64,000 bases of DNA, taken from positions 252,013-316,012 of the IMG/VR virus record IMGVR_UViG_3300021197_001489; one strand, written 5' to 3'. Made by a program: the position numbers and the translations under genes. Under the pieces are notes generated by a model. That model did no database searches, was not told where the DNA came from, and saw only the letters and a program-made list of their open reading frames with translations. Of the stretch, positions 43,663 through 63,950 are shown in pieces (the stretch's first letter is position 1; each line of letters opens with the position of its first letter).

Positions 43663-43710
43663 CATAAGCTATAAACCTGTTATACTGTATGTACAGTTAG
43701 AAACAAGGAG
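43659..43710 (+). promoter_or_regulatory. Early promoter-RBS cassette copy 3
   Basis: TTGACA-N16-TATACT; identical 33-mer at 43678-43710. Confidence 0.88.
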
Positions 43711-44443: not shown

Positions 44444-45074
44444 TCCGGTGGCGTTTAGCGCAGAAGATATTTGGGGTGCGGCTGCACATGCAACTCGCGT
44501 CAACGAGGGCTATTTGAAAGAAGATGAATACAACTGGAACACTGCTCGGTTAACCAAACATGCAAACAGAGATGTTGCCAAGAAAGCACTGGCTGAAAGC
44601 ACTATCACAGAGGCTGATCGCAAGGAGGGCATGGAGGCACGGCACTTCTTGCACAGCCGACTAACAATGAAGGCGCTGTCCAAGCGACTCACAGATTTTG
44701 AAGCAGGACTTGCCAAAGCAGTGGCATTAGACGAGTTTATTGTGCCGCAAGACAGAATGATGATTGGCATTGTTAACAGTCAAATAGTCAGCTATCATCG
44801 CCAGCTTCAAGAAGAATCAATGACCAAGGATGCAGTGTGGGGATATGTAGCAGAAGTTGGCCTGCGTGTTGACTTAAAAGTGACACCGACTGCACGTTTT
44901 TGGATTGACAGATACGACACTTTCCGTTATAATAGTATTACAAAAGACGGATATAAAGCCAGCTTCTACTACAGAGAAAGACTTGAAGTAGGCAATACAG
45001 TGGAAGTTCGCGGCACTGTTAAGAAACATGCGGACAATACAACATATCTTAATCGCGTAAAGATTGAAGGGTAG
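44430..45074 (+). CDS. Hypothetical protein with C-terminal OB-fold-like domain
   Basis: C-terminal VEVRGTVKKH...TYLNRVKI. Confidence 0.75.
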   Translation: MTKTDPVAFSAEDIWGAAAHATRVNEGYLKEDEYNWNTARLTKHANRDVAKKALAESTITEADRKEGMEARHFLHSRLTMKALSKRLTDFEAGLAKAVALDEFIVPQDRMMIGIVNSQIVSYHRQLQEESMTKDAVWGYVAEVGLRVDLKVTPTARFWIDRYDTFRYNSITKDGYKASFYYRERLEVGNTVEVRGTVKKHADNTTYLNRVKIEG

Positions 45075-48619: not shown

Positions 48620-49078
48620 GTGCTATCAAAATTAGATTTCAAACAAATAGTAAACATTCTTGGCGACGATCCAGTTCGACCACACCTCAATGGCAAATTT
48701 CGCTGCACCAAGGGTCGCGAAGTGTACGCACTCTATGAAGATCAATTTGCTGAACAAGCACCAGTTCTTCACAAAGGGCCACTGGCAGTAATTTGTGTAG
48801 CCTACACCAACGAAGTTCCAATCACTGAACAGGAACTTGAACAGTACAGTGATCCTAACGGAAACATTGCAGTGTTTTACACAGTGTGGAGTTACAACCG
48901 CGGCGCAGGACGACAGATTGTTCTGGATGTTGCAAGTTATTTGAAACGTGAGCGCAGCGTAACACGCTGGGTGACTCTTAGCCCACTTACAGAAATGGCA
49001 GAACGTTTCCATTTACGCAACGGCGCCACACTGCTCGCACGTGGAGCGGAGTGCCAAAACTTTGAATACATGGTATGA
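48620..49078 (+). CDS. GNAT-fold-like protein
   Basis: IAVFYTVWSY..GAG..I and VTLSP, reminiscent of the malonyl-CoA decarboxylase/GNAT fold; family call tentative. Confidence 0.55.
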   Translation: MLSKLDFKQIVNILGDDPVRPHLNGKFRCTKGREVYALYEDQFAEQAPVLHKGPLAVICVAYTNEVPITEQELEQYSDPNGNIAVFYTVWSYNRGAGRQIVLDVASYLKRERSVTRWVTLSPLTEMAERFHLRNGATLLARGAECQNFEYMV

Positions 49079-49785
49079 TTCTTCCAATTACAGAAGTTGA
49101 ACACTACACTGATCAACTGTTTCGTATCAAGCTAGAAAGACCGCAATCGTATAGATTTAATGCAGGTGAGTTTACCATGATTGGGCTGTCTAAAGGCGAT
49201 ATTAGTCGCGCATACAGCTTCACTAGCGGCCCTGGCGATGATTACCTAGAGTTTTACAGCATCAAAGTACTTAATGGCCCGCTTACAGGACGTTTACAGC
49301 ATGTGAAACCTGGCGATACGTTAGAAGTTGGAGACAAACCCACAGGAAGTCTTACACTTGCAAATATTGAACTTGGCGGCAATTTATGGTTGTTAGCAAC
49401 AGGCACAGGCATTGCGCCTTTTATCAGCATCCTGCGTGACCCTGCAACATATGATTGTTTTGACAGCGTAACAGTAGTTTGGAGTGTGCGCACAGAACCA
49501 GAGCTGGATGCGTATCAAGACTTTATTAACGAAATGCCTGTGCGTTTTATACCTGTGATTACACAGGCAGGCAATACGTGGAGAGGTCTAGACACCCGCA
49601 TAACAAACTTGCTAGATTGGAAATGCATATTAGTAGACCGTGATCCTGCTCTAAACAAAGTGATGATTTGTGGCAGTCTTGACTTCAACAATGATGTAAA
49701 AACACGTCTGACTGATTGGGGTTGGAGCGAAGGGAATCGCAAAAGTGCAGGCACATTTGTGGTTGAACGTGCATTTGTTGGATAA
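49075..49785 (+). CDS. fpr: Ferredoxin-NADP+ reductase (bacterial Fpr type)
   Basis: FNAGEFTMIGL, RAYSF, GPLTGRL, LATGTGIAPF, MICGS, E.AFV end. Confidence 0.92.
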   Translation: MILPITEVEHYTDQLFRIKLERPQSYRFNAGEFTMIGLSKGDISRAYSFTSGPGDDYLEFYSIKVLNGPLTGRLQHVKPGDTLEVGDKPTGSLTLANIELGGNLWLLATGTGIAPFISILRDPATYDCFDSVTVVWSVRTEPELDAYQDFINEMPVRFIPVITQAGNTWRGLDTRITNLLDWKCILVDRDPALNKVMICGSLDFNNDVKTRLTDWGWSEGNRKSAGTFVVERAFVG

Positions 49786-49792
49786 GTACAAT

Positions 49793-50347
49793 ATGCAAGA
49801 AGATATCAGAAACCTTATACAATTAACCGAAGCCAAAGAAGAAAAACTTGCGGCTGATCCGTTACCATATAGCAGTGGTGATCTAGAACCTGTACTGTCA
49901 AAAGACAACGTCGATTATCACTACAATGTGCTAACCAAAGGCTATGTAAATCGCTACAACAAAGGCGAAGGTGATCCGAAGTTTAATTATGGTGGAGCAA
50001 AACTGCACAATCTTTTCTGGACACAACTACAACCACCTAAAGGATCAAACCGTCCTAAAGGGACGATTAAAGAGTTCATCGACAAGCATCATGAAGACTA
50101 TGACAATTTCAAAAAAGAAATGCTTGCTGCGGCTATGAGCATACAAGGTTCGGGTTGGGTATATCTTGCCAAAAACGGCAGTATAAAAACTACACCCAAT
50201 CAGTCATACAAAACTGATATACTGTTGCCAATTGATATGTGGGAACACAGTTTTATGGATTATATTCCAGCAAAAGATGCTAAGAAAAAATACATTGAAA
50301 ACATGATGAAGATTGTTAACTGGGATGTTATTAACGGGAGACTATGA
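49793..50347 (+). CDS. sod: Fe/Mn superoxide dismutase with short N-terminal extension
   Basis: LPY..DLEP, YHY....GY, LHNLFW, QGSGWVYL, DMWEH; ATAAGTA motif at 49782. Confidence 0.9.
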   Translation: MQEDIRNLIQLTEAKEEKLAADPLPYSSGDLEPVLSKDNVDYHYNVLTKGYVNRYNKGEGDPKFNYGGAKLHNLFWTQLQPPKGSNRPKGTIKEFIDKHHEDYDNFKKEMLAAAMSIQGSGWVYLAKNGSIKTTPNQSYKTDILLPIDMWEHSFMDYIPAKDAKKKYIENMMKIVNWDVINGRL

Positions 50348-50514
50348 TGATTAAAAAATTTATTACAAGCAGACTTGACGAGCGCACTAGTTGGGACGGC
50401 GCGGCACTTATTGCAATTGGTGTAATTATACTGATTGCAGGACCGTTTGCCAAACTTGCAGCTTATGCAGCTATAGCTTATGGAGCATGGACAATATGGA
50501 AAAAAGAACAGTAA
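50344..50514 (+). CDS. Small two-TM protein (56 aa, not in ORF track)
   Basis: GGAG RBS; RLDERTSWDGAALIAIGVIILIAGP...IWKKEQ*. Confidence 0.75.
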   Translation: MMIKKFITSRLDERTSWDGAALIAIGVIILIAGPFAKLAAYAAIAYGAWTIWKKEQ

Positions 50515-50999
50515 AACTTGCACTGGTTGCAATCTTATGTTTTGGTCTTGGAATACTGGCAACCTGGATTGGTTGCTCAATTTGGGACAAACACAGCCAC
50601 AGGATAACTTGGGAGTACCCAATTACCAAAATTAATGGAGAAACTCCTCCGGGCAAAATGCAGCCATTGGTAAACACTGAAACCATGCTTGATACAACAC
50701 AAAGCGACGGTATGCGTTTGGTAGTGATGAAAGGCACACGACTTGCAGGAACTAGAGTTGCAATACATGTGCATCAATACGGTGGTCACACCTGTGTACT
50801 CGAAGGAACCATAACTGATTTTGTTGAAGGTAAACCAAACGGCGTTTATCCAGCAGGCACCTGTTATTATATGCCAGCAAATACTCCAATGAGTGCTGCC
50901 AATCTTGGAACAGAAGATGCATTATTAATTGATACATTTGTTCTTCCGTTTGATGTTCCAACGATTACAATAATGGAGCCAGGGTATGACACAGAATAA
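50496..50999 (+). CDS. Membrane-anchored cupin protein
   Basis: N-terminal TM; HVHQYGG..CVLEG, YPAG.CYYMP, MSAAN. Confidence 0.8.
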   Translation: MEKRTVKLALVAILCFGLGILATWIGCSIWDKHSHRITWEYPITKINGETPPGKMQPLVNTETMLDTTQSDGMRLVVMKGTRLAGTRVAIHVHQYGGHTCVLEGTITDFVEGKPNGVYPAGTCYYMPANTPMSAANLGTEDALLIDTFVLPFDVPTITIMEPGYDTE

Positions 51000-51144
51000 A
51001 CCGGCAATGGCTCCTAAAGAGCCAGGGCAAAAACCCAAGAATAAATGGGACTACAGTAAAGAATACAGCGAGCGTGACTGGATGCGAACTGTAGGCTACG
51101 GAACGCCAGATGGAAAGTATTTCAAAGATGATAACGATCACTGA
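50986..51144 (+). CDS. Small protein (52 aa)
   Basis: GGAG RBS; bridges the cupin and iscA genes. Confidence 0.55.
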   Translation: MTQNKPAMAPKEPGQKPKNKWDYSKEYSERDWMRTVGYGTPDGKYFKDDNDH

Positions 51145-51433
51145 AGAAGCAAAACAGTATTTGGATAAAGTACGCAACGACGACTACGTTACACTTGGTG
51201 TAAAGGGTGGTGGCTGTTCAGGCTTTACCTATGTGTGGGACTTTAAAAACAACTGGCCAGATGTAAACTGGAGTGAGCCATACGCAGATGCACTGGTGTT
51301 AGACCCAATGGCAGAAATGTTTGTAGCAGGTTGTACCATAGACTACAAAAATGAACTAGGTGGTAGTTATCTTACAGTAATCAACCCAAATGCAACTGCA
51401 ACCTGTGGCTGCGGGGAGAGCTTTGCTGCTTAA
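51128..51433 (+). CDS. iscA: Fe-S cluster assembly A-type carrier (IscA/HesB)
   Basis: ITITEEA, GVKGGGCSGFTY, IDY, NPNATATCGCGESF. Confidence 0.93.
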   Translation: MITITEEAKQYLDKVRNDDYVTLGVKGGGCSGFTYVWDFKNNWPDVNWSEPYADALVLDPMAEMFVAGCTIDYKNELGGSYLTVINPNATATCGCGESFAA

Positions 51434-51436
51434 TCC

Positions 51437-51443
51437 ATAAATA
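51437..51443 (+). promoter_or_regulatory. Late promoter ATAAATA at the start of the structural cluster
   Basis: ATAAATA 24 nt before ATG 51467; the same motif occurs at 12441, 15541, 52390 and 61177. Confidence 0.7.
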
Positions 51444-51466
51444 CACAAGTATTAAAGGATTGATAG

Positions 51467-51928
51467 ATGGCACAACAAATAATCGACTTAGGAACTTCGG
51501 CAAACGCAGGCGACGGTGATAATCTTCGCAGTGCAATGGATAAAACCAACGATAACTTCACTGAAGTTTACACTGCTGGTCCAGTTGGTTCAAACATTTC
51601 AATCACAAACAACTCAATTTCAAGCACCAACACAAATGGCAACATTACACTAGCCACAGATGGCACTGGTGTTATTCAAGTTGCTAACGATATTGTACCT
51701 GATGTTAACAACACACGCTGGATTGGTAGTGCTAATGTACGTCCATTAGGAGCATACATCGGAACTGCTGGAGTAATAAGTTCAGGACCATTGACTCTTC
51801 CTACATTTGCAGACAATACCGCAAGAGATGCTGCAATTACGCAACCAGCCGCGGGTATGATAATCTTTAATACAACAGGCACAAAGTTCCAAGGATACAC
51901 AGGCAGTGCTTGGGTTGACTTAAACTAG
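51467..51928 (+). CDS. Baseplate/fibre-attachment structural protein
   Basis: gp9/gp10-like N-terminus IDLGTSANAGDGDNLRSAMDKTNDNFTEVY; AAGMIIFN...FQGY..AW. Confidence 0.75.
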   Translation: MAQQIIDLGTSANAGDGDNLRSAMDKTNDNFTEVYTAGPVGSNISITNNSISSTNTNGNITLATDGTGVIQVANDIVPDVNNTRWIGSANVRPLGAYIGTAGVISSGPLTLPTFADNTARDAAITQPAAGMIIFNTTGTKFQGYTGSAWVDLN

Positions 51929-51941
51929 TAAAGGATAAGCA

Positions 51942-52370
51942 ATGGGATTCATAAAAGATACAGACGGTATTGCCAGATCACGTAAAGCAGATAAAGACAT
52001 TACCTATAGATATGCCGATGCAGATGTAAACACATTTTTAGGTGGCGGTACTGCAGGTAGTATTGTTACAGCTGGAGGAATCACTGGTGGCATACAAACC
52101 ATAAGTGGTCCAGGTGCAATCAACCTCACAACATTATACACTGAACTTACAACAACTGGTGCAGATGCATTCTCACTTGCAAATGGTGCCGCAGGGCAGA
52201 TTAAAATAATCACCTTGCTTGTAGACGGCGGTAACGCAACAATCACTCCAACTACATTTTCAAACGGCACATCAATCACAATGGACGCCGCAAATGATTC
52301 AGTTACAATGATCTATGGTACCAACGGTTGGCAGATAATTGCCGCACAAGCAATAACTGTTAATGCATAA
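51942..52370 (+). CDS. Putative virion structural protein
   Basis: G/T/A-rich beta domain shared with the C-terminus of 58454..59362. Confidence 0.75.
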   Translation: MGFIKDTDGIARSRKADKDITYRYADADVNTFLGGGTAGSIVTAGGITGGIQTISGPGAINLTTLYTELTTTGADAFSLANGAAGQIKIITLLVDGGNATITPTTFSNGTSITMDAANDSVTMIYGTNGWQIIAAQAITVNA

Positions 52371-52423
52371 ACTTTAGTTTACAATTGCCATAAATACTCA
52401 TAACAGCAAGTTAGAGGTTCAGT

Positions 52424-54574
52424 ATGGCAAGACAAGTAATTAATGTAGGCGCAACCGCAAATGACGGCACCGGAGACGGTCTCCGTACTGCCTATATCAA
52501 GTGTAACGATAACTTTCAAGAACTGTATCAAACCTCAACAACTCCTATACAGATTGTCAACGGCACTTCAAACGTAGCAGTTACTGAAAATGCCAATGTC
52601 ACGGTATCAATTGCTGGCAGTGCCAATGTTGTAAACTTTGCTGGCAGCATAACAGAATTTACCGGTAATGCTTCTATCAGTGGCGACCTGTCTATTGGTA
52701 ACAGTGTAACTGTTACACAGGACGTTACAATAAGTGATCAACTTATTATTGTAGGCACCCTGGGCAGCAATATGATTCCTGACGGTAACGGCACTAGAGA
52801 CTTAGGGTCAAATGCAGCAAAATGGAAGGACCTATATCTAAGCGGTACCAGTACCGTCCTTGGAAATATAACGTCATCAGCAAACATAGCTGGTGCTAAT
52901 ATTATTGCATCACAAGATGTTATAATTGCCGGGCAACATGTCACAACTGGAAATGTAACAGCTGGGAACATAATCACTGCTGGTGTTGTCACTGCAACAG
53001 GTAATGTCACCGGTGGAAACTTGGTTACAGGCGGTTCTGTAGCAGCAACTGGAGATATTAGCGGCGCAGCTATTACAGCAACAGGCAACTTTAGTGCATT
53101 AAATATTACTGCAACAGGCAGTGCAAACATAACTGCTGGCGGCTTTTTTGTAGGTGATGGTGGATTTTTATCCAACGTCACTGCCGCGTCAAACGTTGCA
53201 GTAACTCAAATTGCCAACGGAACATCAGTTGTAGGCATAAGTTCATCAGGTGGTAACGTTGAACTTACATCAGGTGGTGTATTAACATTCCAATCAAACG
53301 GCACAAACTTAGACGTACTTCGACCACTCACAGTAACTGGTAACGTAACTGCTACTGGAAACACAAGCGGCGGTAACTTAATTACAGCTGGTAGAGTTGT
53401 TAGTACAGGAAACATAGTATCAAGTGGTAATATCAGTGCTGTAAACTTCTTAGGTAACGGTAGTTTCTTAACGGGCGTTGCATCAACTGCTATAACAAAC
53501 GGCACATCAAATGTCACAGTTGCAAGTGGCGCTGCTACAACAGTTGGAGTTGCTGGCACTACTAGGCTTACTGTAAGTGCAACTGGCGCCGCTGTAGCAG
53601 GACTAATAACTGCAACTGGCAATATTACTGCTACAGGTAATGTAGCAGGCGGAAACGTAGTAACTGGTGGTTTAATAACTGCAACAGGCAATATCACTGC
53701 TACAGGTAATGTAGCAGGTGGAAACCTAGTAACTGGTGGTGCAGTAATTGCTACCGGGGCAGTAACTGGTGCAACACTTGCCGGTGACGGATCAGCATTA
53801 ACTGCACTAAATGGAACCAATATAGCAAGTGGTACAGTTGCAGCCGCTAGAGTGGCAACACTCAACCAAAATACAACTGGTAGTGCAGCCACACTCACAA
53901 CCGCAAGAGCAATTGCACTAACAGGTGACGTAACTGGTACTGCCGACTTTGATGGTAGTGCAGGCATTAGTATTGCGGCTACTATTGCAGCTAACTCAGT
54001 TGCACTTGGCACAGACACAACAGGTAATTATGTTGCTACAGGTGCAGTTAGCGGTGTTGGTCTTAGTGGTAGTTCAAGTAGTGAAGGTGGTACATTTACT
54101 GTAACATCAAATGCTACAAATCTTAACACAGCCTCAACTATTGTTGCAAGAGATGCCTCAGGTAACTTTGTTGCTGGCACAATAACTGCACTTGCAACTT
54201 CAGCACAATATGCTGACATTGCAGAGATGTATAGCAGTGATCACCCACACGAACCCGGCACAGTGCTAGAGTTTGGCGGTGCAGCAGAAGTAACCCGTAG
54301 CAGTCAAGACGCTTCGCCAAGAGTAGCAGGAGTAGTGAGTACCAAGCCAGCACACTTGATGAACAACGAACAAGATGGTGTTGCAGTTGCATTGGTAGGG
54401 CGCGTACCAACACATGTTGTTGGTCCTGTGCGCAAAGGTGACATGATGGTTGCCACAGCAAATGGCAGAGCAAGAGCCGAGGCTAATCCAGCAATGGGAA
54501 CTGTGATTGGCAAAGCACTGGAAAATTTTGATGATGCTCAAGGGACAATTGAAGTAGTAGTAGGAAGGTTCTAA
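52424..54574 (+). CDS. Tail fibre protein
   Basis: gp9/gp10-like N-terminus, TATGN[IV] repeats, C-terminal YADIAE...PGTV...G..VAL.GRVP...G.VIGKALE chaperone-like domain. Confidence 0.85.
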   Translation: MARQVINVGATANDGTGDGLRTAYIKCNDNFQELYQTSTTPIQIVNGTSNVAVTENANVTVSIAGSANVVNFAGSITEFTGNASISGDLSIGNSVTVTQDVTISDQLIIVGTLGSNMIPDGNGTRDLGSNAAKWKDLYLSGTSTVLGNITSSANIAGANIIASQDVIIAGQHVTTGNVTAGNIITAGVVTATGNVTGGNLVTGGSVAATGDISGAAITATGNFSALNITATGSANITAGGFFVGDGGFLSNVTAASNVAVTQIANGTSVVGISSSGGNVELTSGGVLTFQSNGTNLDVLRPLTVTGNVTATGNTSGGNLITAGRVVSTGNIVSSGNISAVNFLGNGSFLTGVASTAITNGTSNVTVASGAATTVGVAGTTRLTVSATGAAVAGLITATGNITATGNVAGGNVVTGGLITATGNITATGNVAGGNLVTGGAVIATGAVTGATLAGDGSALTALNGTNIASGTVAAARVATLNQNTTGSAATLTTARAIALTGDVTGTADFDGSAGISIAATIAANSVALGTDTTGNYVATGAVSGVGLSGSSSSEGGTFTVTSNATNLNTASTIVARDASGNFVAGTITALATSAQYADIAEMYSSDHPHEPGTVLEFGGAAEVTRSSQDASPRVAGVVSTKPAHLMNNEQDGVAVALVGRVPTHVVGPVRKGDMMVATANGRARAEANPAMGTVIGKALENFDDAQGTIEVVVGRF
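53604..53740 (+). repeat. Two-copy 69-nt (23-aa) tandem repeat in the tail fibre
   Basis: LITATGNITATGNVAGGNVVTGG / LITATGNITATGNVAGGNLVTGG, units starting at 53604 and 53673. Confidence 0.9.
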
Positions 54575-57500
54575 ATGGCACAACCAGTTTGGGTAACACC
54601 TGCAGGAGACCTCGGAACTATTGCCGAAAGTTTGTTCTTCCAAGTACCAATTGAAGCAACTGACTCAGATGGCTCAACAGTAAAGTACAGTTTGATAGCT
54701 GGCAAACTTCCTGAAGGTATTCAAGTAACAGAAAACGGTAGCATTGAAGGTGTACCGCTGGCATATGCTAGAGTCAAGGGTGTACCAACTGAAGTTTCTG
54801 AAAACGTAACATCAACATTTGCAGTCCGAGCTACTAGTACAGTTGATAGTCAAATTAACGACAGAACATTTGAGTTAACTGTTACTGGTCAAGATATTCC
54901 AACATTTACTACACCAGCTGGGTCGCTAGGCACATTTTTTGACAGTGATATAATTAATATTACAATTGGGTTTACTGATCAAGATCCTAACGATACTGTG
55001 GTAATCACAGTTGACAACGGAGAATTACCACCCGGATTAACTATCAATCCTACAACTGGTGTGATATCAGGATATATAGTGCCAGTAAGCAATTTGCCTG
55101 ATGATGCTACTTCAGGATTTGATGCTAGTGAATGGGATTTGTATCCGTTTGATTTTTCTACTCGCAGTATAAACAAAACCTATGAATTTACACTGAGCAT
55201 TACAGATGGTAAAGATCAAAATTTAAGAACGTTTTCAATGTATGTGGGCAGTCGCGACAGTTTAACCGCAGACACCACAGACTTTACAGCAGACAGTGAA
55301 GTGTTGACAGCAGATCTGTCGCCACAGCGTACTCCACTTATTACAAATTTCCCAGCAGCGGATCCACCATATGCAGCAGGATTTATTGGCCTGTTTAGAC
55401 ATGACAATTTCTTTGCATACCAAATTCTAGGATTGGATCTTGATGGAGACGCATTTGAATTTGAAATTGCATTAGGAGATTCAAGTGACATTCCCCCTGG
55501 ATTGGTATTTGATAGATTCACAGGTTGGCTAACTGGCTTCTTCCCAGATCAAGGTGCAACAGAAAAAGACTACAGTTTTGCTATCACCATTTACAAAAAA
55601 GACAACAACGCAGTTGTAAGCGAACCTTATAACTATACGATGTCGGTTATAGGCAGTATTGAAAGTTCAGTTACTTGGCTGACCGGCACATTGATTCCAG
55701 ACAGAGATGTGAATGATCCAATATACAGTCTTGGCACAATAGACAACGGCGAAACCAGCATGCTGGCTGTTAAAGCAACCAATCCAAGTGGGCGTTTTTT
55801 ACAATTTAAACTAAAAGCTGGCAGCTATCCAAGCACACCAGGGCAGTACAACTTGCTACCACAAGGGTTGCAACTTTTGGCTAGCGGTGAAATTGCCGGA
55901 CGTGTAAGTTTTAATACCTTTGCAATTGATGGAGGAACAACCACATTTGACAAAAATACCACAACAAGGCTTGAGAACGCTGAAACCACATTTGATAAAG
56001 CCTTTGACTTCACTGTGGTTGCATATAGCAGTGATGGCCTGGTCAGTGTAAGCAGAAAGTTCCGTATCACAGTTGACAGAGCATACAACTCACCATATAA
56101 TGGATTATATATCAAAGCCATGCCGGATCAAGCAGATAGAAATTTTGTAAACAGCCTTTTACAAGACACAGATATCATTCCTCCTAGTCGTGTATATCGT
56201 CCTGATGATCCCTATTTTGGTGTGGCTAAAGATGTGGTATACAATCATGCATACAGTTTAGACACTGCTACACTTGACGAATACTTACTTGCATTAAGCA
56301 AAAACCATTTTCGCAAAAAGATTATTCTTGGACCTATTAAAACAGCACAAGCACTCAATCCCGACGGGTCTGTTGAATACGAAGTTGTTTACAGCGACAT
56401 TGTTGACACAGGAGTGAATAGTTTAGGACAAAGTCCAGCACAAAGTATCACACTTCCTTATCCTGCAACAGTGTACAGCGAAACAGCCACTGAAGCACGA
56501 CAATTGTTTGAAGACAACTTCACCAACGGCAACGTTGCAGATGCAAATGTAACTGCACTGGATCAAATGAGTGTTGCTTACTTGGAAGAGTCAAGAGACC
56601 TAAACATGTTGGCAAACATTGCAAGTCAGATGGCAAAAGATTGGATAGCTGATGGACAACCTGGAGACCCTGCTCCAATATGGACTGGCGATAAGTATAT
56701 TCCAAATCCCAAAGTAAACGATGTGTTCAACTGGACTCCCAGTAACCAATGTCCTGTAAACATGGAAGAGCCGCTTAGATATGACAAATTTAAAACACAG
56801 TTAGCAGCTCTAACAGCCAATGACATAATATGGTGTGATTACACAGTTGAAGTGGATGATAAAGCTGATCCTGAAGGTAAGAAGAAGAAAACTGTTCGCA
56901 GTATTGCTCCTTTTGGATGGCTAATCGAATACGGTGATACTGCGTACATTGTGATGCGTGGTACACAAAATGAATATGATGGCAAGATCGACACCATGGC
57001 AGCCAAAGTTATCAATCCAATTGCTGGATTTGGCAAAGGCAAAACACACAACGGATTTACTATTGCTTACAAAGGGCTTGGTCCAAAAGGCGAAGAGCGT
57101 CCTGCAGATGTCCCAGGTATCAGTTTGTTTGATGCACTAAACAACACCACTAAAACAAAAATCAAAATTGGCGGACACAGCCTTGGCAGTGCAATCAGCA
57201 CACTTATAACCAATTATGCACAAACTTTTAACAAGTTTGACCGCATTGAAGGATATGTAAGCGCATCACCAACAGTGGGCAATCAAAAATACGCCGACTA
57301 TTTCAATGCTCTTCAAGACAAAGACGGCAACATGCTGGGCAACACTTTCTACAGACTCACAAACAAAAATGATATTGTGCCAATGATACCTGGATCATGG
57401 TTACAATATATAGCAGTAGCACAAGAAGTGTTATTTGATGCTCCTTACACTGATCCTGATAACCTTGTAAAAACTGCAAAAAATCATCAGATTTGTTGTT

Positions 57501-58441
57501 GCTATGCGTATGCACTTAAACATCCACTGGATGTATTCAATCCTAGCAATGAAGATTCATCATGCAAGTTCCCTGTTGGACCGGCAAGTCCGGATTATTT
57601 CTCACTGGAACAACATCTTGACAGTTTGATATTGTATTACGGTTCGTGGGTAGATAACCCTGATGGCACAGTTTCCACCACTTTCACTACTGTATACCCA
57701 AACAGTTTGATCAATATGAGAGATCAAGTGATTGATGTAGTAGGACAACAAAGTACAGTACTTCCGCTGTGGATGACCACAAAGCAAACAGACGGCAGAG
57801 TGTTAGGATTTACCAAGGCATGGGTAATTTGCTATGCACAACCTGGTGAAAGTGACCGAATCAGTTACAACATACGCACACAGTTTGGCGAAATATTAAA
57901 CAGAGTAGACTTCATCAGTGATAGATATATCCTGGACAATCAACTAACTGCCGCTTGGGTACCAAACGAAGACTCAACAGACGGCGGCAACTGGAATCCA
58001 AGTCCACCACTTAGCACAACGTTTGATGTCGACTTTTACGTTGACTGGACTGCAATATCAACTGCTATACTTGGAATTGCTGTTGGCCTCACCAATAATT
58101 TAAGTCCAGTTGCAAATGCTGTTACGAGTGGATTTGCCAACGGCGACTTCAACGAAAGTGGTGTTATTACTGCCGCAGATGCACTTGATGCGGCCAAATT
58201 CGGAGCTGATACGTTAGAAGATGGTACTGCAAAAACACGCATCCAAACTATTTTTGAGCCAGCACTAAGACTTGCACGGACTAACGACCCAACAACGTAT
58301 AATGAATATTTTGTTGGTGCAGGAAACACAACCACATTTGATGGCAACAGTTTGAGGTTTACTAGCCCTGTGGATGTTTACGGCAAGACGGACAAGTATG
58401 ATAAATACCTCGTATTCCCCAAGACGAATATTTTAGGATAA
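54575..58441 (+). CDS. Baseplate wedge-like structural protein with inserted class-3 lipase domain
   Basis: Ig/cadherin-like W.TPAG.LG repeats with GxLPxGL; internal IVMRGT, HNGF, GGHSLG, NxNDIVP, NH; wedge-like C-terminus. Confidence 0.8.
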   Translation: MAQPVWVTPAGDLGTIAESLFFQVPIEATDSDGSTVKYSLIAGKLPEGIQVTENGSIEGVPLAYARVKGVPTEVSENVTSTFAVRATSTVDSQINDRTFELTVTGQDIPTFTTPAGSLGTFFDSDIINITIGFTDQDPNDTVVITVDNGELPPGLTINPTTGVISGYIVPVSNLPDDATSGFDASEWDLYPFDFSTRSINKTYEFTLSITDGKDQNLRTFSMYVGSRDSLTADTTDFTADSEVLTADLSPQRTPLITNFPAADPPYAAGFIGLFRHDNFFAYQILGLDLDGDAFEFEIALGDSSDIPPGLVFDRFTGWLTGFFPDQGATEKDYSFAITIYKKDNNAVVSEPYNYTMSVIGSIESSVTWLTGTLIPDRDVNDPIYSLGTIDNGETSMLAVKATNPSGRFLQFKLKAGSYPSTPGQYNLLPQGLQLLASGEIAGRVSFNTFAIDGGTTTFDKNTTTRLENAETTFDKAFDFTVVAYSSDGLVSVSRKFRITVDRAYNSPYNGLYIKAMPDQADRNFVNSLLQDTDIIPPSRVYRPDDPYFGVAKDVVYNHAYSLDTATLDEYLLALSKNHFRKKIILGPIKTAQALNPDGSVEYEVVYSDIVDTGVNSLGQSPAQSITLPYPATVYSETATEARQLFEDNFTNGNVADANVTALDQMSVAYLEESRDLNMLANIASQMAKDWIADGQPGDPAPIWTGDKYIPNPKVNDVFNWTPSNQCPVNMEEPLRYDKFKTQLAALTANDIIWCDYTVEVDDKADPEGKKKKTVRSIAPFGWLIEYGDTAYIVMRGTQNEYDGKIDTMAAKVINPIAGFGKGKTHNGFTIAYKGLGPKGEERPADVPGISLFDALNNTTKTKIKIGGHSLGSAISTLITNYAQTFNKFDRIEGYVSASPTVGNQKYADYFNALQDKDGNMLGNTFYRLTNKNDIVPMIPGSWLQYIAVAQEVLFDAPYTDPDNLVKTAKNHQICCCYAYALKHPLDVFNPSNEDSSCKFPVGPASPDYFSLEQHLDSLILYYGSWVDNPDGTVSTTFTTVYPNSLINMRDQVIDVVGQQSTVLPLWMTTKQTDGRVLGFTKAWVICYAQPGESDRISYNIRTQFGEILNRVDFISDRYILDNQLTAAWVPNEDSTDGGNWNPSPPLSTTFDVDFYVDWTAISTAILGIAVGLTNNLSPVANAVTSGFANGDFNESGVITAADALDAAKFGADTLEDGTAKTRIQTIFEPALRLARTNDPTTYNEYFVGAGNTTTFDGNSLRFTSPVDVYGKTDKYDKYLVFPKTNILG

Positions 58442-58453
58442 AAAGAGAGAAAC

Positions 58454-59362
58454 ATGGCAAGCAACATCAACCCCAACAATATCGATACCACCTACCCTAT
58501 TGCTGGGCAGGATAACGACAGCCAGGGCTTTCGTGATAACTTTACAAACGTCAAAACAAACTTTGAATATGCAGAGACTGAAATTGATGATTTGCAAGCA
58601 AAAGGTATCTTCAAAAGTGCGCTGACCGGCACAACATTAGACAACGACATGGCAGGCGGACTAATCAAAAACGCAAAAACACAAGGTTTTCGCGGGACAC
58701 GCATTGCACTTGGTGCAGTAACTGGTTCAACAGCAATTGATTATAGTGCAGGACAGTGGTATACTGTTACTACATCTGGATCAATTACACTGGCATTTAG
58801 TAATATTCCAGCAAGCGGCAACGCAAGTTGGTTTAATGTTCGAATCAATGTTGCCAACATTGCACACACTGTTACACTTCCAGCCACAGTTGGAGCAAGT
58901 GGTTCTGCACAGAGTGTAGCCGGCATCCAAGGCATCAGTTCAAATGTAATTACATTTAACGAAACTGGCACCTATGAGTTTGAATTCCACACAGATGACG
59001 GTGGAACAACAATTTACCTAAGTGAACTAACACGCCCACGCAACAGACTGATGAATCCAATACAGCTTGCAGGCAGTGAAGATTTAGCCGCATCTGGTGC
59101 AGCCAGTTTAGCAAAGACTACCAGTTACTTTACAACAGGCGGTGCAGAAACAAGCACACTAGCCGCAGGTGTTGAAGGACAAGTTAAAGTCCTTGCTATG
59201 CTAGGCGATGGCGGTGATATGGTAACCACAGTGACTAATGCAGGATGGAAAGCATCAGGCACAGGTATTATTACATTCAGCGACATTGGCGAAGCAGTAA
59301 CACTTATGTATATCAATAGCAAATGGTTTTGCATTGGTAACAACGGCGCTGCGTTTGGATAA
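58454..59362 (+). CDS. Putative baseplate/virion structural protein
   Basis: MASNINPNNIDTTYPIAGQDNDSQGFRDNF N-terminus; beta-rich domains; lies in the structural cluster. Confidence 0.8.
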   Translation: MASNINPNNIDTTYPIAGQDNDSQGFRDNFTNVKTNFEYAETEIDDLQAKGIFKSALTGTTLDNDMAGGLIKNAKTQGFRGTRIALGAVTGSTAIDYSAGQWYTVTTSGSITLAFSNIPASGNASWFNVRINVANIAHTVTLPATVGASGSAQSVAGIQGISSNVITFNETGTYEFEFHTDDGGTTIYLSELTRPRNRLMNPIQLAGSEDLAASGAASLAKTTSYFTTGGAETSTLAAGVEGQVKVLAMLGDGGDMVTTVTNAGWKASGTGIITFSDIGEAVTLMYINSKWFCIGNNGAAFG

Positions 59363-59377
59363 CGGTAAATTAAATTA

Positions 59378-59425
59378 TTGACATACTGACTCCTCTACGC
59401 TATAATTAGTAAAGTGTAGAGGAGT
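59378..59425 (+). promoter_or_regulatory. Sigma70 promoter nested in an RBS-sequestering hairpin
   Basis: TTGACA-N17-TATAAT; ACTCCTCTACGC (59389-59400) pairs with GTGTAGAGGAGT (59414-59425). Confidence 0.75.
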
Positions 59426-59429
59426 TTTT

Positions 59430-59840
59430 ATGACACAAGTAGATTTAAATCGTTACAAAGAATTTGTTCAAACAGTAACAAGCGAACAAAGCAATGATAC
59501 AATAGCAATGCATCTGGCAATGACTGAACTAGAAGCAGTTAGTGGTGTTAACATGGCACTGTTGTTGACTGGTGCAGTTGGACTTAGTGCTGAAGGTGGC
59601 GAGTTTATGGAAATTGTAAAGAAGTGCATCTTTCAAGGCAAACCCATGGATGAAGATACGCAGTTCCATGCAAAACGTGAATTGGGAGACATCATGTGGT
59701 ACTGGATTAACAGTTGCCGCGCACTCAACATTGATCCCAATGATGTTATTGAAGAAAATGTACGCAAATTAGAAAAACGCTATCCCGGCGGAAGTTTTGA
59801 TGTGCATTACTCAGAGAACAGACAAGCAGGCGATCTCTAG
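59430..59840 (+). CDS. mazG: MazG-like nucleotide pyrophosphohydrolase
   Basis: GLSAEGGEFMEIVKK, ELGDIMWY, NVRKLEKRYPGG.F. Confidence 0.9.
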   Translation: MTQVDLNRYKEFVQTVTSEQSNDTIAMHLAMTELEAVSGVNMALLLTGAVGLSAEGGEFMEIVKKCIFQGKPMDEDTQFHAKRELGDIMWYWINSCRALNIDPNDVIEENVRKLEKRYPGGSFDVHYSENRQAGDL

Positions 59841-60064
59841 TGGAACATCCGTTAATTGGTAACATTGACGAGCTGTCCGAAAGTGACATCATTGACAAAA
59901 TTACTGAACTTAACAAAAAGTATTACGCAAGTATGAGACTGGGCAACTCCCACTTAACCAATCAAGTAGGAATGGCACTTGAAACATACCGCAACAAACT
60001 GTCGGAAAAGCAGCGTAAGCGCAGTGCCGGCGACGATTTTGAGGATAAAATAAACATATCATGA
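59840..60064 (+). CDS. Small helical hypothetical protein
   Basis: GTG start overlapping the mazG stop. Confidence 0.75.
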   Translation: MEHPLIGNIDELSESDIIDKITELNKKYYASMRLGNSHLTNQVGMALETYRNKLSEKQRKRSAGDDFEDKINIS

Positions 60065-60705
60065 GCTATGTACGGTTAGGGTTCAACCCACAATTTTATG
60101 CAGCAGTTCACACACCCGACGGTATTATTATGAACAGCTATCATGTAGACATGCAAATGGTAACTGTAAGCAATAACAGTTATGATCAAAACATTGCATT
60201 AGCTCGGGTAAAGTATATCATATTTGAACAATTCTGTAACAGCATTTTCATTGACCAAACAGAAACAGACGCAATTGCTGCATACGAAGCAGCAGGGATG
60301 CAGTGCGTTGGCTTTCCTACCGAACCGGTTGATCAAATTGTAGGTCTTGCGTTATACTTAAAGTTAAATGCAGTTATTGAAGATGTAATACAAATATCAG
60401 ATTTGAACTTGCACAGTGACGCCGGCGGCGGTATCACATATCTGCATCACGATGACGAAGAGATAGGACCGTTTGACGACGAAGGGTGGTGGCACGGCAG
60501 TCATCCAACCTGTGCTATTGGAAAACAAAAAGGCAAAGTGGTAACACTAAATGATACAACTTGGAAAAATGTTGATCTAGAATGGGACGACGAAGACGAT
60601 GATGAACCAGAAGTAGAAGTTGAAATCATTGTTGACGGACATATATTTCCAGAAGAATCAGTTACAGAAAATGTTGTAGAATTCAAACCCAATGATAAAA
60701 AATAA
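60061..60705 (+). CDS. Hypothetical protein with acidic tail
   Basis: 214 aa, contiguous in the operon. Confidence 0.8.
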   Translation: MSYVRLGFNPQFYAAVHTPDGIIMNSYHVDMQMVTVSNNSYDQNIALARVKYIIFEQFCNSIFIDQTETDAIAAYEAAGMQCVGFPTEPVDQIVGLALYLKLNAVIEDVIQISDLNLHSDAGGGITYLHHDDEEIGPFDDEGWWHGSHPTCAIGKQKGKVVTLNDTTWKNVDLEWDDEDDDEPEVEVEIIVDGHIFPEESVTENVVEFKPNDKK

Positions 60706-61180
60706 GTTTGGCGAACAAGTATATAATATAGAAGATGTAGTGGATCTCATAATGAGCGATCAAAACATCTCTGGTATCACTGTGGATCAAACAGTAACAA
60801 CACCTGTTGGTGTTGATGTAGAGTTTTGCACACAAACTGTTGAAGATATCAATGTACAAGAATACGACAAGCGCAATCAACAAAACTGGTTGATGCCTGA
60901 TGAATACAAACAGTTAGACATTGCAGCACACATTATTGATTGCTGCAAGACTGATGCTGAACTACAACGTGCAGCACAAGAATTGTTGTTGTTCCAAGAA
61001 CGTGACTTGTTTAACTTGTTACGGTATCTCAAGTATCTAGTAGACACAATGAAATCCAATAGCATCATTTGGGGTGTTGGTCGAGGATCCAGTGTGGCCA
61101 GTTATGTGTTATACTTGCTAGGGGTACACAGAGTTAACAGCATGTACTATGATTTAGACCCCACCGAATTCCTTAGATAA
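60692..61180 (+). CDS. dnaE: Stand-alone fragment of DNA polymerase III alpha
   Basis: R...EL..F...L...L.Y...LVD......WGVGRGSSVASYVLYLLGVHRVN...YDL...EFLR*, matching the DnaE GRGS region. Confidence 0.8.
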   Translation: MIKNKFGEQVYNIEDVVDLIMSDQNISGITVDQTVTTPVGVDVEFCTQTVEDINVQEYDKRNQQNWLMPDEYKQLDIAAHIIDCCKTDAELQRAAQELLLFQERDLFNLLRYLKYLVDTMKSNSIIWGVGRGSSVASYVLYLLGVHRVNSMYYDLDPTEFLR

Positions 61181-61211
61181 ATATAAAGTACGCATAGAAT
61201 AGGAGTGTTAC

Positions 61212-61679
61212 ATGGCACCAAAACGCACATATCGAACATCGCAAGGCAAGGCGGTTGACCTCGGCGCATTGTTGTTGCAAAATGAAAATGTCAGAGCAGT
61301 TGGCAATATGGGCGTAAATGCCCGCGGTGACAGAATTGACAACAAAGGCAAAGTTGTTGATAGCAAAGTACAGCAGACCAAACGTCAGTACAACAAACAG
61401 ATCGGGCCAGTTGACGAGGTTCCACCAACAAGCCGCCGGGCAGTTGAAGATGTTATGCCAGCGCCAGTTGACAATAGTGCTTCTAAAAAACCAAAGGCCA
61501 AGAAGCCTAAAGTTTCTAAAGCAACGCCAGTTGTAGATGAATCTGTAATTGGTGTGTCGCCGCCATTACCTGCTGGCGGACTTGCTGATGCTATTGCACG
61601 AGCCAGAACTGTTAAACAAGAACAAGCAAAAACCCCAAGACAACTTGCACAAGAAAAAGCTGGAGTGAGAAAAATATAA
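61212..61679 (+). CDS. Basic late hypothetical protein
   Basis: ATAAATA (61177) and AGGAG upstream; AVGNMGVNARGD motif. Confidence 0.8.
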   Translation: MAPKRTYRTSQGKAVDLGALLLQNENVRAVGNMGVNARGDRIDNKGKVVDSKVQQTKRQYNKQIGPVDEVPPTSRRAVEDVMPAPVDNSASKKPKAKKPKVSKATPVVDESVIGVSPPLPAGGLADAIARARTVKQEQAKTPRQLAQEKAGVRKI

Positions 61680-62110: not shown

Positions 62111-62139
62111 TTGACATCTCACTGTACATCTGTTATACT
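62111..62139 (+). promoter_or_regulatory. Sigma70-like promoter
   Basis: TTGACA-N17-TATACT with TG extension. Confidence 0.8.
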
Positions 62140-63305: not shown

Positions 63306-63334
63306 TTGACAACTGCTCTTGTATATGTTATAAT
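63306..63334 (+). promoter_or_regulatory. Sigma70-like promoter
   Basis: TTGACA-N17-TATAAT with TG extension. Confidence 0.82.
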
Positions 63335-63362
63335 AAAGCATAATAAGAAAACAGGAGCATAA

Positions 63363-63950
63363 ATGAAATATCAAAAAACAATACTCACAGATGTCGATGG
63401 CGTACTATTAGACTGGGAGTGGGCCTTTAACGTCTGGATGCAAGAACACGGATTCGAACTTACTGATGGTTATCAGTATGAATACGATATGTCTCTACGC
63501 TATGGTATTAGCAAGGAGCAAGTTCGCAAACTGATACGCACCTTTAATGAAAGTGCTGCGATAGGCTTCCTCCCGGTCTTGCGTGATGCCATGTACTGGG
63601 TCAAAAGACTGCACGAGCAACATGGTTTTACATTTCACTGTATTACCAGTCTCAGCCTTGACCAAAATGCAGGCAAACTGCGTGAAATGAATCTTCAAAA
63701 AATGTTTGGTAAAACTGCTTTTTCTAAAGTTCTGTGCTTGGACACAGGCGCAGACAAGCATGATGCACTTCGTGAGTACAATAACTCAGGATGTTGGTGG
63801 ATTGAAGACAAACCAGAAAACGCGGATGTTGGACTTGAGTATGGATTGAAGCCATTACTTATGGAACACGGTCACAACATGATGGCTGATGTTCACTATC
63901 CCATTGTAAAGAATTGGGAAGATATCTACAGACTTGTAACAAAACTTTAA
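63363..63950 (+). CDS. HAD-superfamily 5'(3')-deoxyribonucleotidase-like protein
   Basis: ILTDVDGVL, CITS, GADK, WIEDK. Confidence 0.88.
   Translation: MKYQKTILTDVDGVLLDWEWAFNVWMQEHGFELTDGYQYEYDMSLRYGISKEQVRKLIRTFNESAAIGFLPVLRDAMYWVKRLHEQHGFTFHCITSLSLDQNAGKLREMNLQKMFGKTAFSKVLCLDTGADKHDALREYNNSGCWWIEDKPENADVGLEYGLKPLLMEHGHNMMADVHYPIVKNWEDIYRLVTKL

What the first reader, a model, noticed from the sequence alone, without database searches (positions are those of the whole stretch)
59378..59432. Promoter-in-a-hairpin switch that hides the mazG RBS only in read-through transcripts
Seen: a 12-bp stem ACTCCTCTACGC/GTGTAGAGGAGT whose right arm is the SD and whose 13-nt loop is the -10 box (TATAAT, overlapping ATAATTA). 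RNA from this promoter lacks the left arm, leaving the RBS free. RNA reading through from the baseplate operon, where no terminator is seen, folds and blocks it. Known: T4 uses this logic for e, soc, 49 and I-TevI, blocking late genes on early RNA. Inference: here the polarity appears reversed, silencing mazG and perhaps the coupled dnaE-fragment operon on late RNA.
Basis: partly seen in the sequence, partly recalled or inferred. Interest (0 to 1): 0.6.

Follow-up and report, generated by a model that had tools for sequence, protein, structure and literature searches.

The report
Promoter nested inside a terminator hairpin
A marine jumbo phage packs a transcription terminator, a host-type promoter and the next gene's ribosome-binding site into one 52-base hairpin cassette; this is a compact variant of the promoter-terminator cassettes known from T4-like phages, not a new kind of switch.

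Summary
Window 59378-59432 holds a perfect TTGACA-17-TATAAT promoter. A 12-14 bp stem (59388-59401 / 59413-59426) carries the -10 box in its loop and the AGGAG ribosome-binding site in its 3' arm. The stem is followed by five T and the mazG ATG at 59430.

It lies 27 nt after the stop of the last tail-fibre gene, where this genome's other terminators lie.

Seventeen distinct versions sit at the same place in related 300-350 kb phages. All keep the -10 in the loop and the stem by compensatory changes, and all but one keep the T-run. A strong ribosome-binding site in the 3' arm is found in only some lineages, and the downstream gene differs, because mazG is an insertion.

Best reading: a composite terminator-promoter. 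Upstream transcripts fold the hairpin and stop. Promoter-born transcripts start in the 3' arm and cannot fold it. Hiding the ribosome-binding site on leaked read-through RNA is physically likely but secondary.

The closest known systems are the PeSL cassettes of T4-like phages and the T4 e/soc/49/I-TevI hairpins. No RNA data could test any of this.

The parts
58454..59362 (+). Last gene (302 aa) of a tightly packed tail-fibre/baseplate-periphery operon; stop TAA at 59360-59362
   Evidence: ORF list. The neighbours carry a T4 gp9/gp10 N-terminal motif and tail-fibre PHROGs. 37 homologous loci come from 300-350 kb phage contigs.
59363..59377 (+). A/T-rich stretch between the stop codon and the -35 box (UP-element-like)
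   Evidence: Sequence. The same feature is described for PeSL cassettes (PMC2839356).
59378..59383 (+). -35 hexamer TTGACA
   Evidence: The first five bases, TTGAC, are invariant in all 17 aligned cassettes.
59388..59401 (+). 5' arm of the hairpin, lying in the promoter spacer (core 59389-59400)
   Evidence: RNAfold; covariation.
59401..59406 (+). -10 hexamer TATAAT, in the hairpin loop
   Evidence: The -10 lies in the loop in all 17 cassettes.
59413..59414 (+). Predicted transcription start (7th-8th nt after the -10); inferred, not mapped
   Evidence: Standard sigma-70 spacing applied. In relatives the same rule puts the start in the loop or within the first 7 nt of the 3' arm.
59413..59426 (+). 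3' arm of the hairpin (core 59414-59425); holds the Shine-Dalgarno AGAGGAG at 59418-59424
   Evidence: The duplex with the anti-SD is -8.6 kcal/mol, 4-5 nt before the ATG.
59425..59429 (+). T5 run: U-tract of the terminator-like signal and at the same time the SD-ATG spacer
   Evidence: Only 8 of 189 SD-bearing ORFs of the genome have TTTT within 12 nt before the start.
59430..59840 (+). MazG-like pyrophosphatase gene (136 aa), an insertion at the 3' edge of the cassette
   Evidence: phrog_229, E 3.8e-46. It is absent from L082/L083, which have a near-identical cassette.
59840..60064 (+). Conserved 74-aa gene, the ancestral first gene behind the cassette. Its GTG start overlaps the mazG TAG by one base.
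   Evidence: Alignment A2; sequence.

Best explanation
The cassette is a composite intrinsic terminator and sigma-70-type promoter at the border between the late tail-fibre operon and the replication-gene module.

RNA polymerase arriving from upstream transcribes both arms. The RNA folds into the 12-14 bp hairpin just as the U-tract is in the hybrid, and most transcripts end at about the mazG start codon.

Host RNA polymerase that binds the nested promoter starts at about 59413/59414, at the first base of the 3' arm. Its RNA lacks the 5' arm, so it cannot form the terminator. It also carries a free Shine-Dalgarno on a 17-nt leader, so mazG and the coupled genes behind it are made.

Because the 3' arm is also the Shine-Dalgarno, any transcript that leaks through the rather weak terminator has its ribosome-binding site locked. 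This gives a second, probably secondary, layer of insulation.

Shown: the sequence anatomy, its conservation and its covariation. Inferred: the start site, termination, and the translational block.
For: 1. Hairpin and T5 sit 27 nt after the stop codon. The genome's other 13 hairpin+T-run signals on the + strand nearly all begin 9-49 nt after a stop.
2. A d'Aubenton-Carafa-type terminator score is positive for 15 of 17 distinct cassettes (window 5.2). Canonical terminators of the genome mostly score 15-48, so the composite form looks like a weaker terminator.
3. The T-run stays flush with the stem in 16 of 17 cassettes, while the distance from stem to ATG varies from 5 to 10 nt. T-runs before start codons are otherwise rare, 8 of 189.
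4. Stems differ completely between lineages yet stay paired. 92% of cells are paired and 6 of 9 pairs changed on both sides. The covariation score is 0.513 against 0.261 in shuffles (0 of 500 as high) and at most 0.16 when the partner is slid.
5. There are 21 G-U pairs against 2 A-C, and the + strand fold is the more stable in 14 of 17. The structure is therefore selected in + strand RNA, not as a DNA palindrome.
6. The -10 is in the loop and the predicted start is in the loop or the 3' arm in all 17.
7. In L087 the hairpin is decayed and the T-run is absent, while promoter and SD stay.
8. The closest cultured relative, PA5oct, depends on host RNA polymerase and has sigma-70-like promoters and intrinsic terminators (PMC7318152). 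It has a terminator hairpin with the -35 at its apex at a comparable junction.
9. PeSL cassettes of T4-like phages have been shown to act both as promoter and as terminator (PMC2839356).
Against: - No RNA ends are mapped. Metatranscriptome contigs do not cover 59171-59504.
- The window's loop is 13 nt and its terminator score is only marginally positive. L082 scores -0.9 and L105/L106 have no proper T-run (-27.1), so termination may be weak or absent in some lineages.
- L110 has a 9-bp stem with the -10 in the loop and the AUG in the 3' arm but no T-run. That fits a translational lock better than a terminator.
- The host, and hence its polymerase and terminator requirements, is unknown.
Confidence: 0.65

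Rival explanations
1. One reading: the hairpin is mainly a translational lock. Late transcripts read through the cassette into mazG and the replication genes, and the hairpin hides the ribosome-binding site, so that only promoter-born RNA is translated. This is T4 e/soc/49/I-TevI logic with early and late exchanged.
For: - The SD lies wholly in the 3' arm. The translation-initiation region is 0.12 unpaired in long RNA against 0.41 in short RNA.
- The short leader is unstructured.
- Occlusion by sequence upstream of the start is 0.87, above the 99th percentile of permuted promoter/leader pairs.
- L110 has an AUG-hiding stem without a T-run.
- Sister lineages use a leaderless layout, with the -10 exactly 6 nt before the ATG. 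That too would confine translation to promoter-born RNA.
- The terminator score is weak, so leakage is plausible.
Against: - The T-run flush with the stem is conserved and is not needed for a lock.
- In the G+C-rich-stem lineages the SD is weak (-4.2 kcal/mol, 9-10 nt from the ATG) and the long/short difference is small.
- The same layout of hairpin, T-run and ATG, with the SD in the 3' arm, occurs at genome 146626-146674 without a sigma-70 promoter. An SD in the arm therefore does not imply a switch.
- There is no genome-wide trend (p = 0.43).
- No benefit of silencing MazG or the 74-aa gene late in infection is evident.
Confidence: 0.2
2. The inverted repeat is a DNA operator. A dimeric phage or host regulator binds the two arms flanking the -10 box and represses or times the promoter. 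The RNA fold is incidental.
For: - The arms flank the -10 symmetrically.
- Another promoter family of this genome carries a short palindrome over the -10 and start that is too tight for an RNA hairpin.
Against: - Arm sequences are entirely different between lineages, while complementarity is kept.
- G-U pairs that work only in + strand RNA outnumber A-C by 21 to 2.
- The arms are 12 bp long and 13 bp apart, which is unlike usual operators.
- The cassette is single-copy in the genome.
Confidence: 0.05
3. The hairpin serves only as a 3'-end stabiliser or processing site for the upstream late mRNA, or it is kept as a recombination hotspot for gene shuffling. It has no termination role and no translational role.
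For: - Different genes (mazG; another small ORF in L099/L100) are inserted exactly at the 3' edge of the cassette. This recalls PeSL-mediated shuffling.
- Stable 3' hairpins protect mRNAs; this is general knowledge.
Against: - A 3' stabiliser still needs an end to be made, and the T-run provides it by termination.
- The cassette is not repeated in the genome, so it offers no partner for homologous exchange.
- The strict placing of the -10 in the loop across lineages is not explained.
Confidence: 0.08

Closest known systems
PeSL (promoter-early stem-loop) composite promoter-terminator cassettes of T4-like phages RB49, phi1, PST and nt-1 (Arbiol et al. 2010, PMC2839356; Comeau et al. 2014, PMC4122927)
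   Same: - An intergenic cassette between a stop codon and the next ATG.
- An A/T-rich lead-in and a strong sigma-70-like -35/-10.
- A stable stem-loop that overlaps the promoter. Overlap with the -10 is one of the two commonest PeSL layouts.
- A stem-loop read as a terminator for upstream transcription, an SD and ATG at the 3' end, and gene insertions at the cassette border.
   Different: - Here the phage is a marine relative of PA5oct-like jumbo phages, not a T4-like phage.
- This cassette is single-copy by sequence rather than a repeated ~100-bp motif.
- The SD is inside the 3' arm and the U-tract doubles as the SD-ATG spacer. Terminator, promoter and ribosome-binding site are therefore nested in 52 nt, and leaked transcripts are also translationally locked.
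Inhibitory hairpins at T4 genes e, soc, 49 and I-TevI, each with a late promoter inside the hairpin region (reviewed in PMC3014915)
   Same: The SD and/or AUG is sequestered in long transcripts. A promoter inside the region that encodes the 5' strand gives short transcripts that lack the 5' arm and are well translated.
   Different: - In T4 the internal promoter is a late (gp55) promoter and the silenced RNA is early or middle. Here the internal promoter is sigma-70-type and the upstream genes are structural.
- The T4 hairpins are not described as terminators. Here a U-tract follows the stem, so most long RNA probably ends there.
Composite terminator-promoter of Pseudomonas phage PA5oct between gp199 and gp198 (seen here in L119:3748-3800; not described as such in PMC7318152)
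   Same: A relative (clamp loader 57% identical) that uses host RNA polymerase. A terminator hairpin and U-run are interlocked with a sigma-70 promoter directly after a structural gene.
   Different: In PA5oct the -35 box, not the -10, sits at the hairpin apex and the U-run lies in the spacer. The SD is outside that hairpin.

Membership tests
PeSL composite promoter-terminator cassette | Intergenic, from the upstream stop codon through an A/T-rich stretch to the SD and ATG of the next gene | tested here: met
   Stop at 59360-59362, A/T-rich 59363-59377, ATG at 59430.
PeSL composite promoter-terminator cassette | Strong sigma-70-like -35 and -10 boxes | tested here: met
   12 of 12 match with a 17-bp spacer. 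The promoter is conserved in 17 cassettes. Activity was not measured.
PeSL composite promoter-terminator cassette | Stable stem-loop overlapping or adjoining the promoter | tested here: met
   dG about -20 kcal/mol, z about -6 to -6.8; covariation.
PeSL composite promoter-terminator cassette | The stem-loop terminates upstream transcription | not testable with these tools
   Only sequence signs are available: T5 after the stem, typical position, score 5.2. RNA contigs do not cover the site.
PeSL composite promoter-terminator cassette | Many conserved copies in hyperplastic regions that can recombine with each other | tested here: not met
   The covariance model R1 finds only this copy in the window and the loci. 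In the genome the next hit is weak (24 bits) and lacks a promoter. A different repeated promoter family does exist in the genome.
PeSL composite promoter-terminator cassette | Host phage is a T4-like myovirus | tested here: not met
   The best cultured relative is PA5oct (Arenbergviridae), with 57% identity in the clamp loader. The T4 late motif TATAAATA is not enriched, 8 on + against 6 on -.
T4 e/soc/49/I-TevI-type translational lock with an internal promoter | SD and/or AUG paired in the long transcript | tested here: met
   In silico only. The SD at 59418-59424 lies in the 3' arm; unpaired probability is 0.12 in long RNA against 0.41 in short RNA.
T4 e/soc/49/I-TevI-type translational lock with an internal promoter | The promoter lies so that its transcripts lack the 5' arm | tested here: met
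   By the standard spacing rule the start is at 59413/59414. The short RNA is unstructured. The start was not mapped.
T4 e/soc/49/I-TevI-type translational lock with an internal promoter | Long transcripts actually extend through the gene, i.e. the hairpin is not a terminator | tested here: inconclusive
   A U-tract follows the stem. The terminator score is weakly positive. There is no RNA coverage.
T4 e/soc/49/I-TevI-type translational lock with an internal promoter | Measured difference in translation between long and short leaders | not testable with these tools
   This needs reporter fusions or toeprinting.
Canonical intrinsic (factor-independent) terminator | G+C-containing stem, short loop (3-8 nt), U-tract of 7-9 nt directly after the stem | tested here: inconclusive
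   Stem and U5(AU) are present, but the loop is 13 nt in the window (6-9 nt in many relatives) and the score is low. The simple scanner with loop at most 8 nt missed it.

The most novel reading that the evidence does not exclude
The cassette is a selected two-layer insulator. One 52-nt element encodes terminator, promoter, ribosome-binding site and a translational lock, so the first gene of the replication module can be expressed only from its own promoter. Sister lineages reach the same end differently, with a leaderless layout in which the -10 lies exactly 6 nt before the ATG. This would make promoter-autonomous translation a conserved design rule at this module border in a clade of marine jumbo phages.
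Probability: 0.3. Interest if true: 0.55.

Novelty: new variant of a known kind. Interest (0 to 1): 0.4.

Why it matters
If the reading holds, it shows how far phage regulatory signals can be nested. Four signals (terminator stem, -10 box, ribosome-binding site, and a U-tract that doubles as spacer) share one hairpin, and the promoter escapes its own terminator by starting inside it.

It extends composite promoter-terminator cassettes from T4-like phages to an uncultured clade of marine 300-350 kb phages.

It gives annotators a rule: in these genomes an apparent 'missing terminator' may be hidden around a promoter.

The cassette would also be a compact, portable insulator part for synthetic biology. 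None of this changes basic understanding, because each principle is already known.

Tried and rejected
- Megablast of 58400-60800 against cultured phages found no match. tblastn of the 302-aa protein found none either.
- RNA evidence: six metatranscriptomes hold small parts of the stretch. Their contigs cover 58322-59081 and 60875-61351 but nothing across 59171-59504, so starts, ends and read-through cannot be read.
- The idea that masking of ribosome-binding sites by promoter-proximal sequence is a general design of this genome was rejected. Native pairs average 0.336 against 0.314 for permuted pairs (p = 0.43). The look-alikes at 62111 and 63306 fall in the chance range.
- Search for more copies: model R1 finds none in the window or in 26 loci, and only a weak promoter-less hit in the genome.
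- T4-type late promoter TATAAATA: not enriched.
- A conserved loop motif of the second hairpin element as a candidate promoter class: not enriched, 12 on + against 19 on -.
- Rfam: nothing within 58800-60200.
- mazG loci of other phages (L002-L040) mostly lack any such cassette. L008 has a different composite with the -10 in the 5' arm and a separate SD.
- The supplementary promoter and terminator tables of the PA5oct paper are not held.
- My first terminator scoring let the stem eat into the T-run and was replaced (one search replaced). The score uses modern energies with an old formula and is only a rough guide.
- The MAFFT alignment of the second element shifts register for distant members, so its covariation count is weak. 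The single-sequence folds are the better evidence.

Full report
**What is there.** The window is the last 64 kb of a 316-kb virus record from marine metagenomes, with 41% G+C. One search shows this layout:
- The stop codon of a 302-aa gene lies at 59360-59362, followed by 15 A/T-rich bases.
- TTGACA is at 59378-59383, then a 17-bp spacer, then TATAAT at 59401-59406.
- The last 12 bases of the spacer (59389-59400) are complementary to 59414-59425, giving 11 Watson-Crick pairs and one G-U.
- The 13-nt loop holds the -10 box.
- The 3' arm holds AGAGGAG (59418-59424). It is followed by five T and then the ATG of a MazG-like gene at 59430 (phrog_229, E 3.8e-46).

It left out two things: the perfect -35 box, and the T-run that abuts the stem.

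**Is it more than chance?**
- The 88-nt region folds at -27 kcal/mol, z -5.95.
- The window has five perfect 12/12 promoters against 0.08 expected, all on the coding strand.
- Genome-wide there are 37 sites with at least 11 of 12 matches on the + strand and 7 on the - strand.
- Among those 37, this promoter has by far the most stable overlapping hairpin, -21.4 against -12.2 kcal/mol for the next.

**Relatives.** Homologues of the upstream 302-aa gene occur in 37 viral contigs, many of 300-350 kb.
- In 31 loci a sigma-70-type promoter follows the stop codon of that gene. Six loci (L113-L118) have another fibre gene there instead.
- Seventeen distinct cassettes show the same layout as the window: -35, a 17-18 bp spacer whose 3' part is the 5' arm, the -10 in the loop, the 3' arm, then the ATG 5-10 nt on. 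All but L105/L106 have a T-run after the stem.
- Stem sequences fall into several unrelated types, some pyrimidine-rich with an AGGAG-type 3' arm and some G+C-rich. Pairing is nevertheless kept: 92% of cells are paired and 6 of 9 consensus pairs changed on both sides. The covariation score is 0.513, against 0.261 in shuffles (0 of 500 as high) and at most 0.16 when the partner is slid.
- G-U pairs outnumber A-C mismatches by 21 to 2, and the + strand fold is the more stable in 14 of 17. The structure is thus selected in + strand RNA. This argues against a protein operator on double-stranded DNA.

**What the hairpin most likely does.** A stem followed directly by a U-run is the mark of an intrinsic terminator.
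- This genome has about 13 other such signals on the + strand, nearly all beginning 9-49 nt after an ORF stop. The hairpin studied here begins 27 nt after one.
- The upstream genes, 51110-59362, are packed with gaps of 0-54 nt. They carry T4 gp9/gp10 N-terminal motifs and tail-fibre families, and one is a 1288-aa protein with Ig-like and class-3 lipase domains. No other terminator-like site closes this operon. The simple scanner missed the present one only because it allows loops of at most 8 nt.
- A d'Aubenton-Carafa-type score is positive for 15 of 17 cassettes (3.0-18.8; window 5.2). It is lower than for most of the genome's canonical terminators (15-48), because the loop must house the -10 hexamer.
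- The T-run stays flush with the stem while the distance to the ATG varies. T-runs before start codons are otherwise rare: 8 of 189 ORFs that have a Shine-Dalgarno.
- In L087 the hairpin is decayed and the T-run is absent, while promoter and Shine-Dalgarno remain.

**Why the promoter escapes its own terminator.** Under the usual sigma-70 rule, the start is the 7th nt after the -10.
- In the window this puts it at 59413/59414, the first base of the 3' arm.
- In the relatives it lies in the loop or within the first 7 nt of the 3' arm.
- Promoter-born RNA therefore lacks the 5' arm. The 68-nt RNA from 59413 has no significant structure (dG -5.7, z +0.8).

**The translational lock.** In the window's lineage the Shine-Dalgarno is strong (-8.6 kcal/mol with the anti-SD, 4-5 nt before the ATG) and lies wholly in the 3' arm.
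- The mean unpaired probability of positions -15 to +3 is 0.12 in long RNA and 0.41 in short RNA.

Three results make this look secondary:
1. In the G+C-rich-stem lineages the best Shine-Dalgarno is weak (-4.2 kcal/mol, 9-10 nt from the ATG), and the long/short difference is small.
2. A second element, at genome 146626-146674, has the same layout of hairpin, T5 and ATG with the Shine-Dalgarno in the 3' arm, but no good sigma-70 promoter. It is conserved in about 30 distinct relatives.
3. A permutation test over 29 strong promoters shows no general masking of ribosome-binding sites by sequence upstream of the start. Native pairs average 0.336 and permuted pairs 0.314 (p = 0.43). The present cassette, at 0.87, is an outlier.

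In favour of the lock:
- L110 has a 9-bp stem with the -10 in the loop and the AUG in the 3' arm, but no T-run.
- Four lineages (L088/96/97, L110, L111/108, L112) place the -10 exactly 6 nt before the ATG, with no Shine-Dalgarno. This leaderless layout would also confine translation to promoter-born RNA.

**It is not about mazG.**
- L082/L083, whose upstream protein is 82% identical, carry a near-identical cassette that drives a 74-aa gene directly.
- In the window that gene is 59840-60064. It starts with a GTG that overlaps the mazG stop by one base.
- L099/L100 have another small ORF in the same slot.

MazG is thus an insertion at the 3' edge of a cassette that marks the module border. The genes behind it are a 214-aa protein, a 162-aa DNA-polymerase fragment (phrog_11127) and, further on, the clamp loader. 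They carry further consensus promoters and look like a replication module.

**Comparison with what is known.**
- PeSL cassettes of T4-like phages. These combine a strong sigma-70-like promoter with a stem-loop that often overlaps the -10, and they were shown to act as promoter and as terminator (PMC2839356, PMC4122927). The present cassette meets the anatomical criteria. It is not a repeated motif in the genome, and the phage is not T4-like.
- PA5oct. The nearest cultured relative is Pseudomonas phage PA5oct, 57% identical in the clamp loader. PA5oct depends on host RNA polymerase and has sigma-70-like promoters and intrinsic terminators (PMC7318152). It too has an interlocked terminator-promoter after a structural gene, with the -35 at the hairpin apex.
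- What is particular here is the degree of nesting: the Shine-Dalgarno is in the 3' arm and the U-tract serves as the spacer.

**Limits.** Nothing is mapped at the RNA level.
- Six marine or aquatic metatranscriptomes hold parts of the stretch, but no contig covers 59171-59504. Contigs cannot show RNA ends anyway.
- The host is unknown.
- The terminator score is a rough heuristic.
- Rfam has nothing in this region.

**Verdict.** The best reading is a composite terminator-promoter with a built-in, probably secondary, translational lock (confidence about 0.65). It is a new, more compact variant of a known kind, and of moderate interest.

Noticed in passing
window 5437, 28478, 40025, 43659-43700 (also genome 12714, 59031, 70501, 71237, 73298, 172929, 212210): A repeated promoter-plus-leader cassette of about 60 nt, in at least 8 near-identical copies on the + strand. 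Each has a -35, an extended -10, a conserved start region ending in TACAGTTAG, then the SD about 25 nt before an ATG. It contains a tight palindrome (ACTGTA, 2 nt, TACAGT) over the -10 and start, which looks more like an operator than an RNA hairpin. This repeat family is the better PeSL analogue as far as copy number goes.
   Followed up: partly
genome 146626-146674 (outside the window; locus L121:1501-1549): A second element of hairpin, T5 and ATG, with the Shine-Dalgarno (GAGGG) in the 3' arm but no good sigma-70 promoter. It lies 23 nt after a 224-aa gene. It is conserved with changed stems in about 30 distinct related contigs, and the loop and start of the 3' arm are strikingly conserved.
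   Followed up: partly
L088:3908-3960, L110:3925-3965, L111:3925-3962, L112:3876-3916: In four related lineages the conserved 74-aa gene is served by a promoter whose -10 lies exactly 6 nt before the ATG, with no Shine-Dalgarno. This predicts leaderless mRNA. [quoted passage not shown]
   Followed up: partly
window 59430-59842: mazG is an insertion between the cassette and the conserved 74-aa gene. The 74-aa gene has switched from ATG to a GTG that overlaps the mazG TAG by one base, which suggests translational coupling.
   Followed up: yes
window 56073-56101, 54939-54966 and 44905-44933: Perfect or near-perfect sigma-70 consensus promoters lie inside long ORFs on the coding strand, two of them in the 1288-aa tail-module gene. 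Their function is unknown.
   Followed up: no
window 49075-50999: Three host-like metabolic genes lie just upstream of the tail-fibre operon: an FNR-like oxidoreductase, an Fe/Mn superoxide dismutase and a cupin protein.
   Followed up: no
window 54575-58441: A 1288-aa protein in the tail-fibre module carries a class-3 lipase domain (E 3e-16) and Ig-like domains. It may be a virion-borne esterase or lipase.
   Followed up: no
L119:3748-3800 (Pseudomonas phage PA5oct, between gp199 and gp198): A 12-bp terminator hairpin with the -35 TTGACA at its apex, then T7, then TATAAT. This is an interlocked terminator-promoter in a cultured relative for which RNA-seq exists.
   Followed up: partly
L008:2920-3003: Upstream of another phage's mazG lies a sigma-70 promoter whose -10 is in the 5' arm of an 11-bp terminator hairpin with a U-run. 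A 7-bp outer helix pairs the -35 region with the downstream SD.
   Followed up: no
window 63306-63365: The promoter behind the clamp-loader gene has a 9-bp pairing between its spacer and the SD of the next gene, with no T-run. By the permutation test this lies within the chance range.
   Followed up: yes
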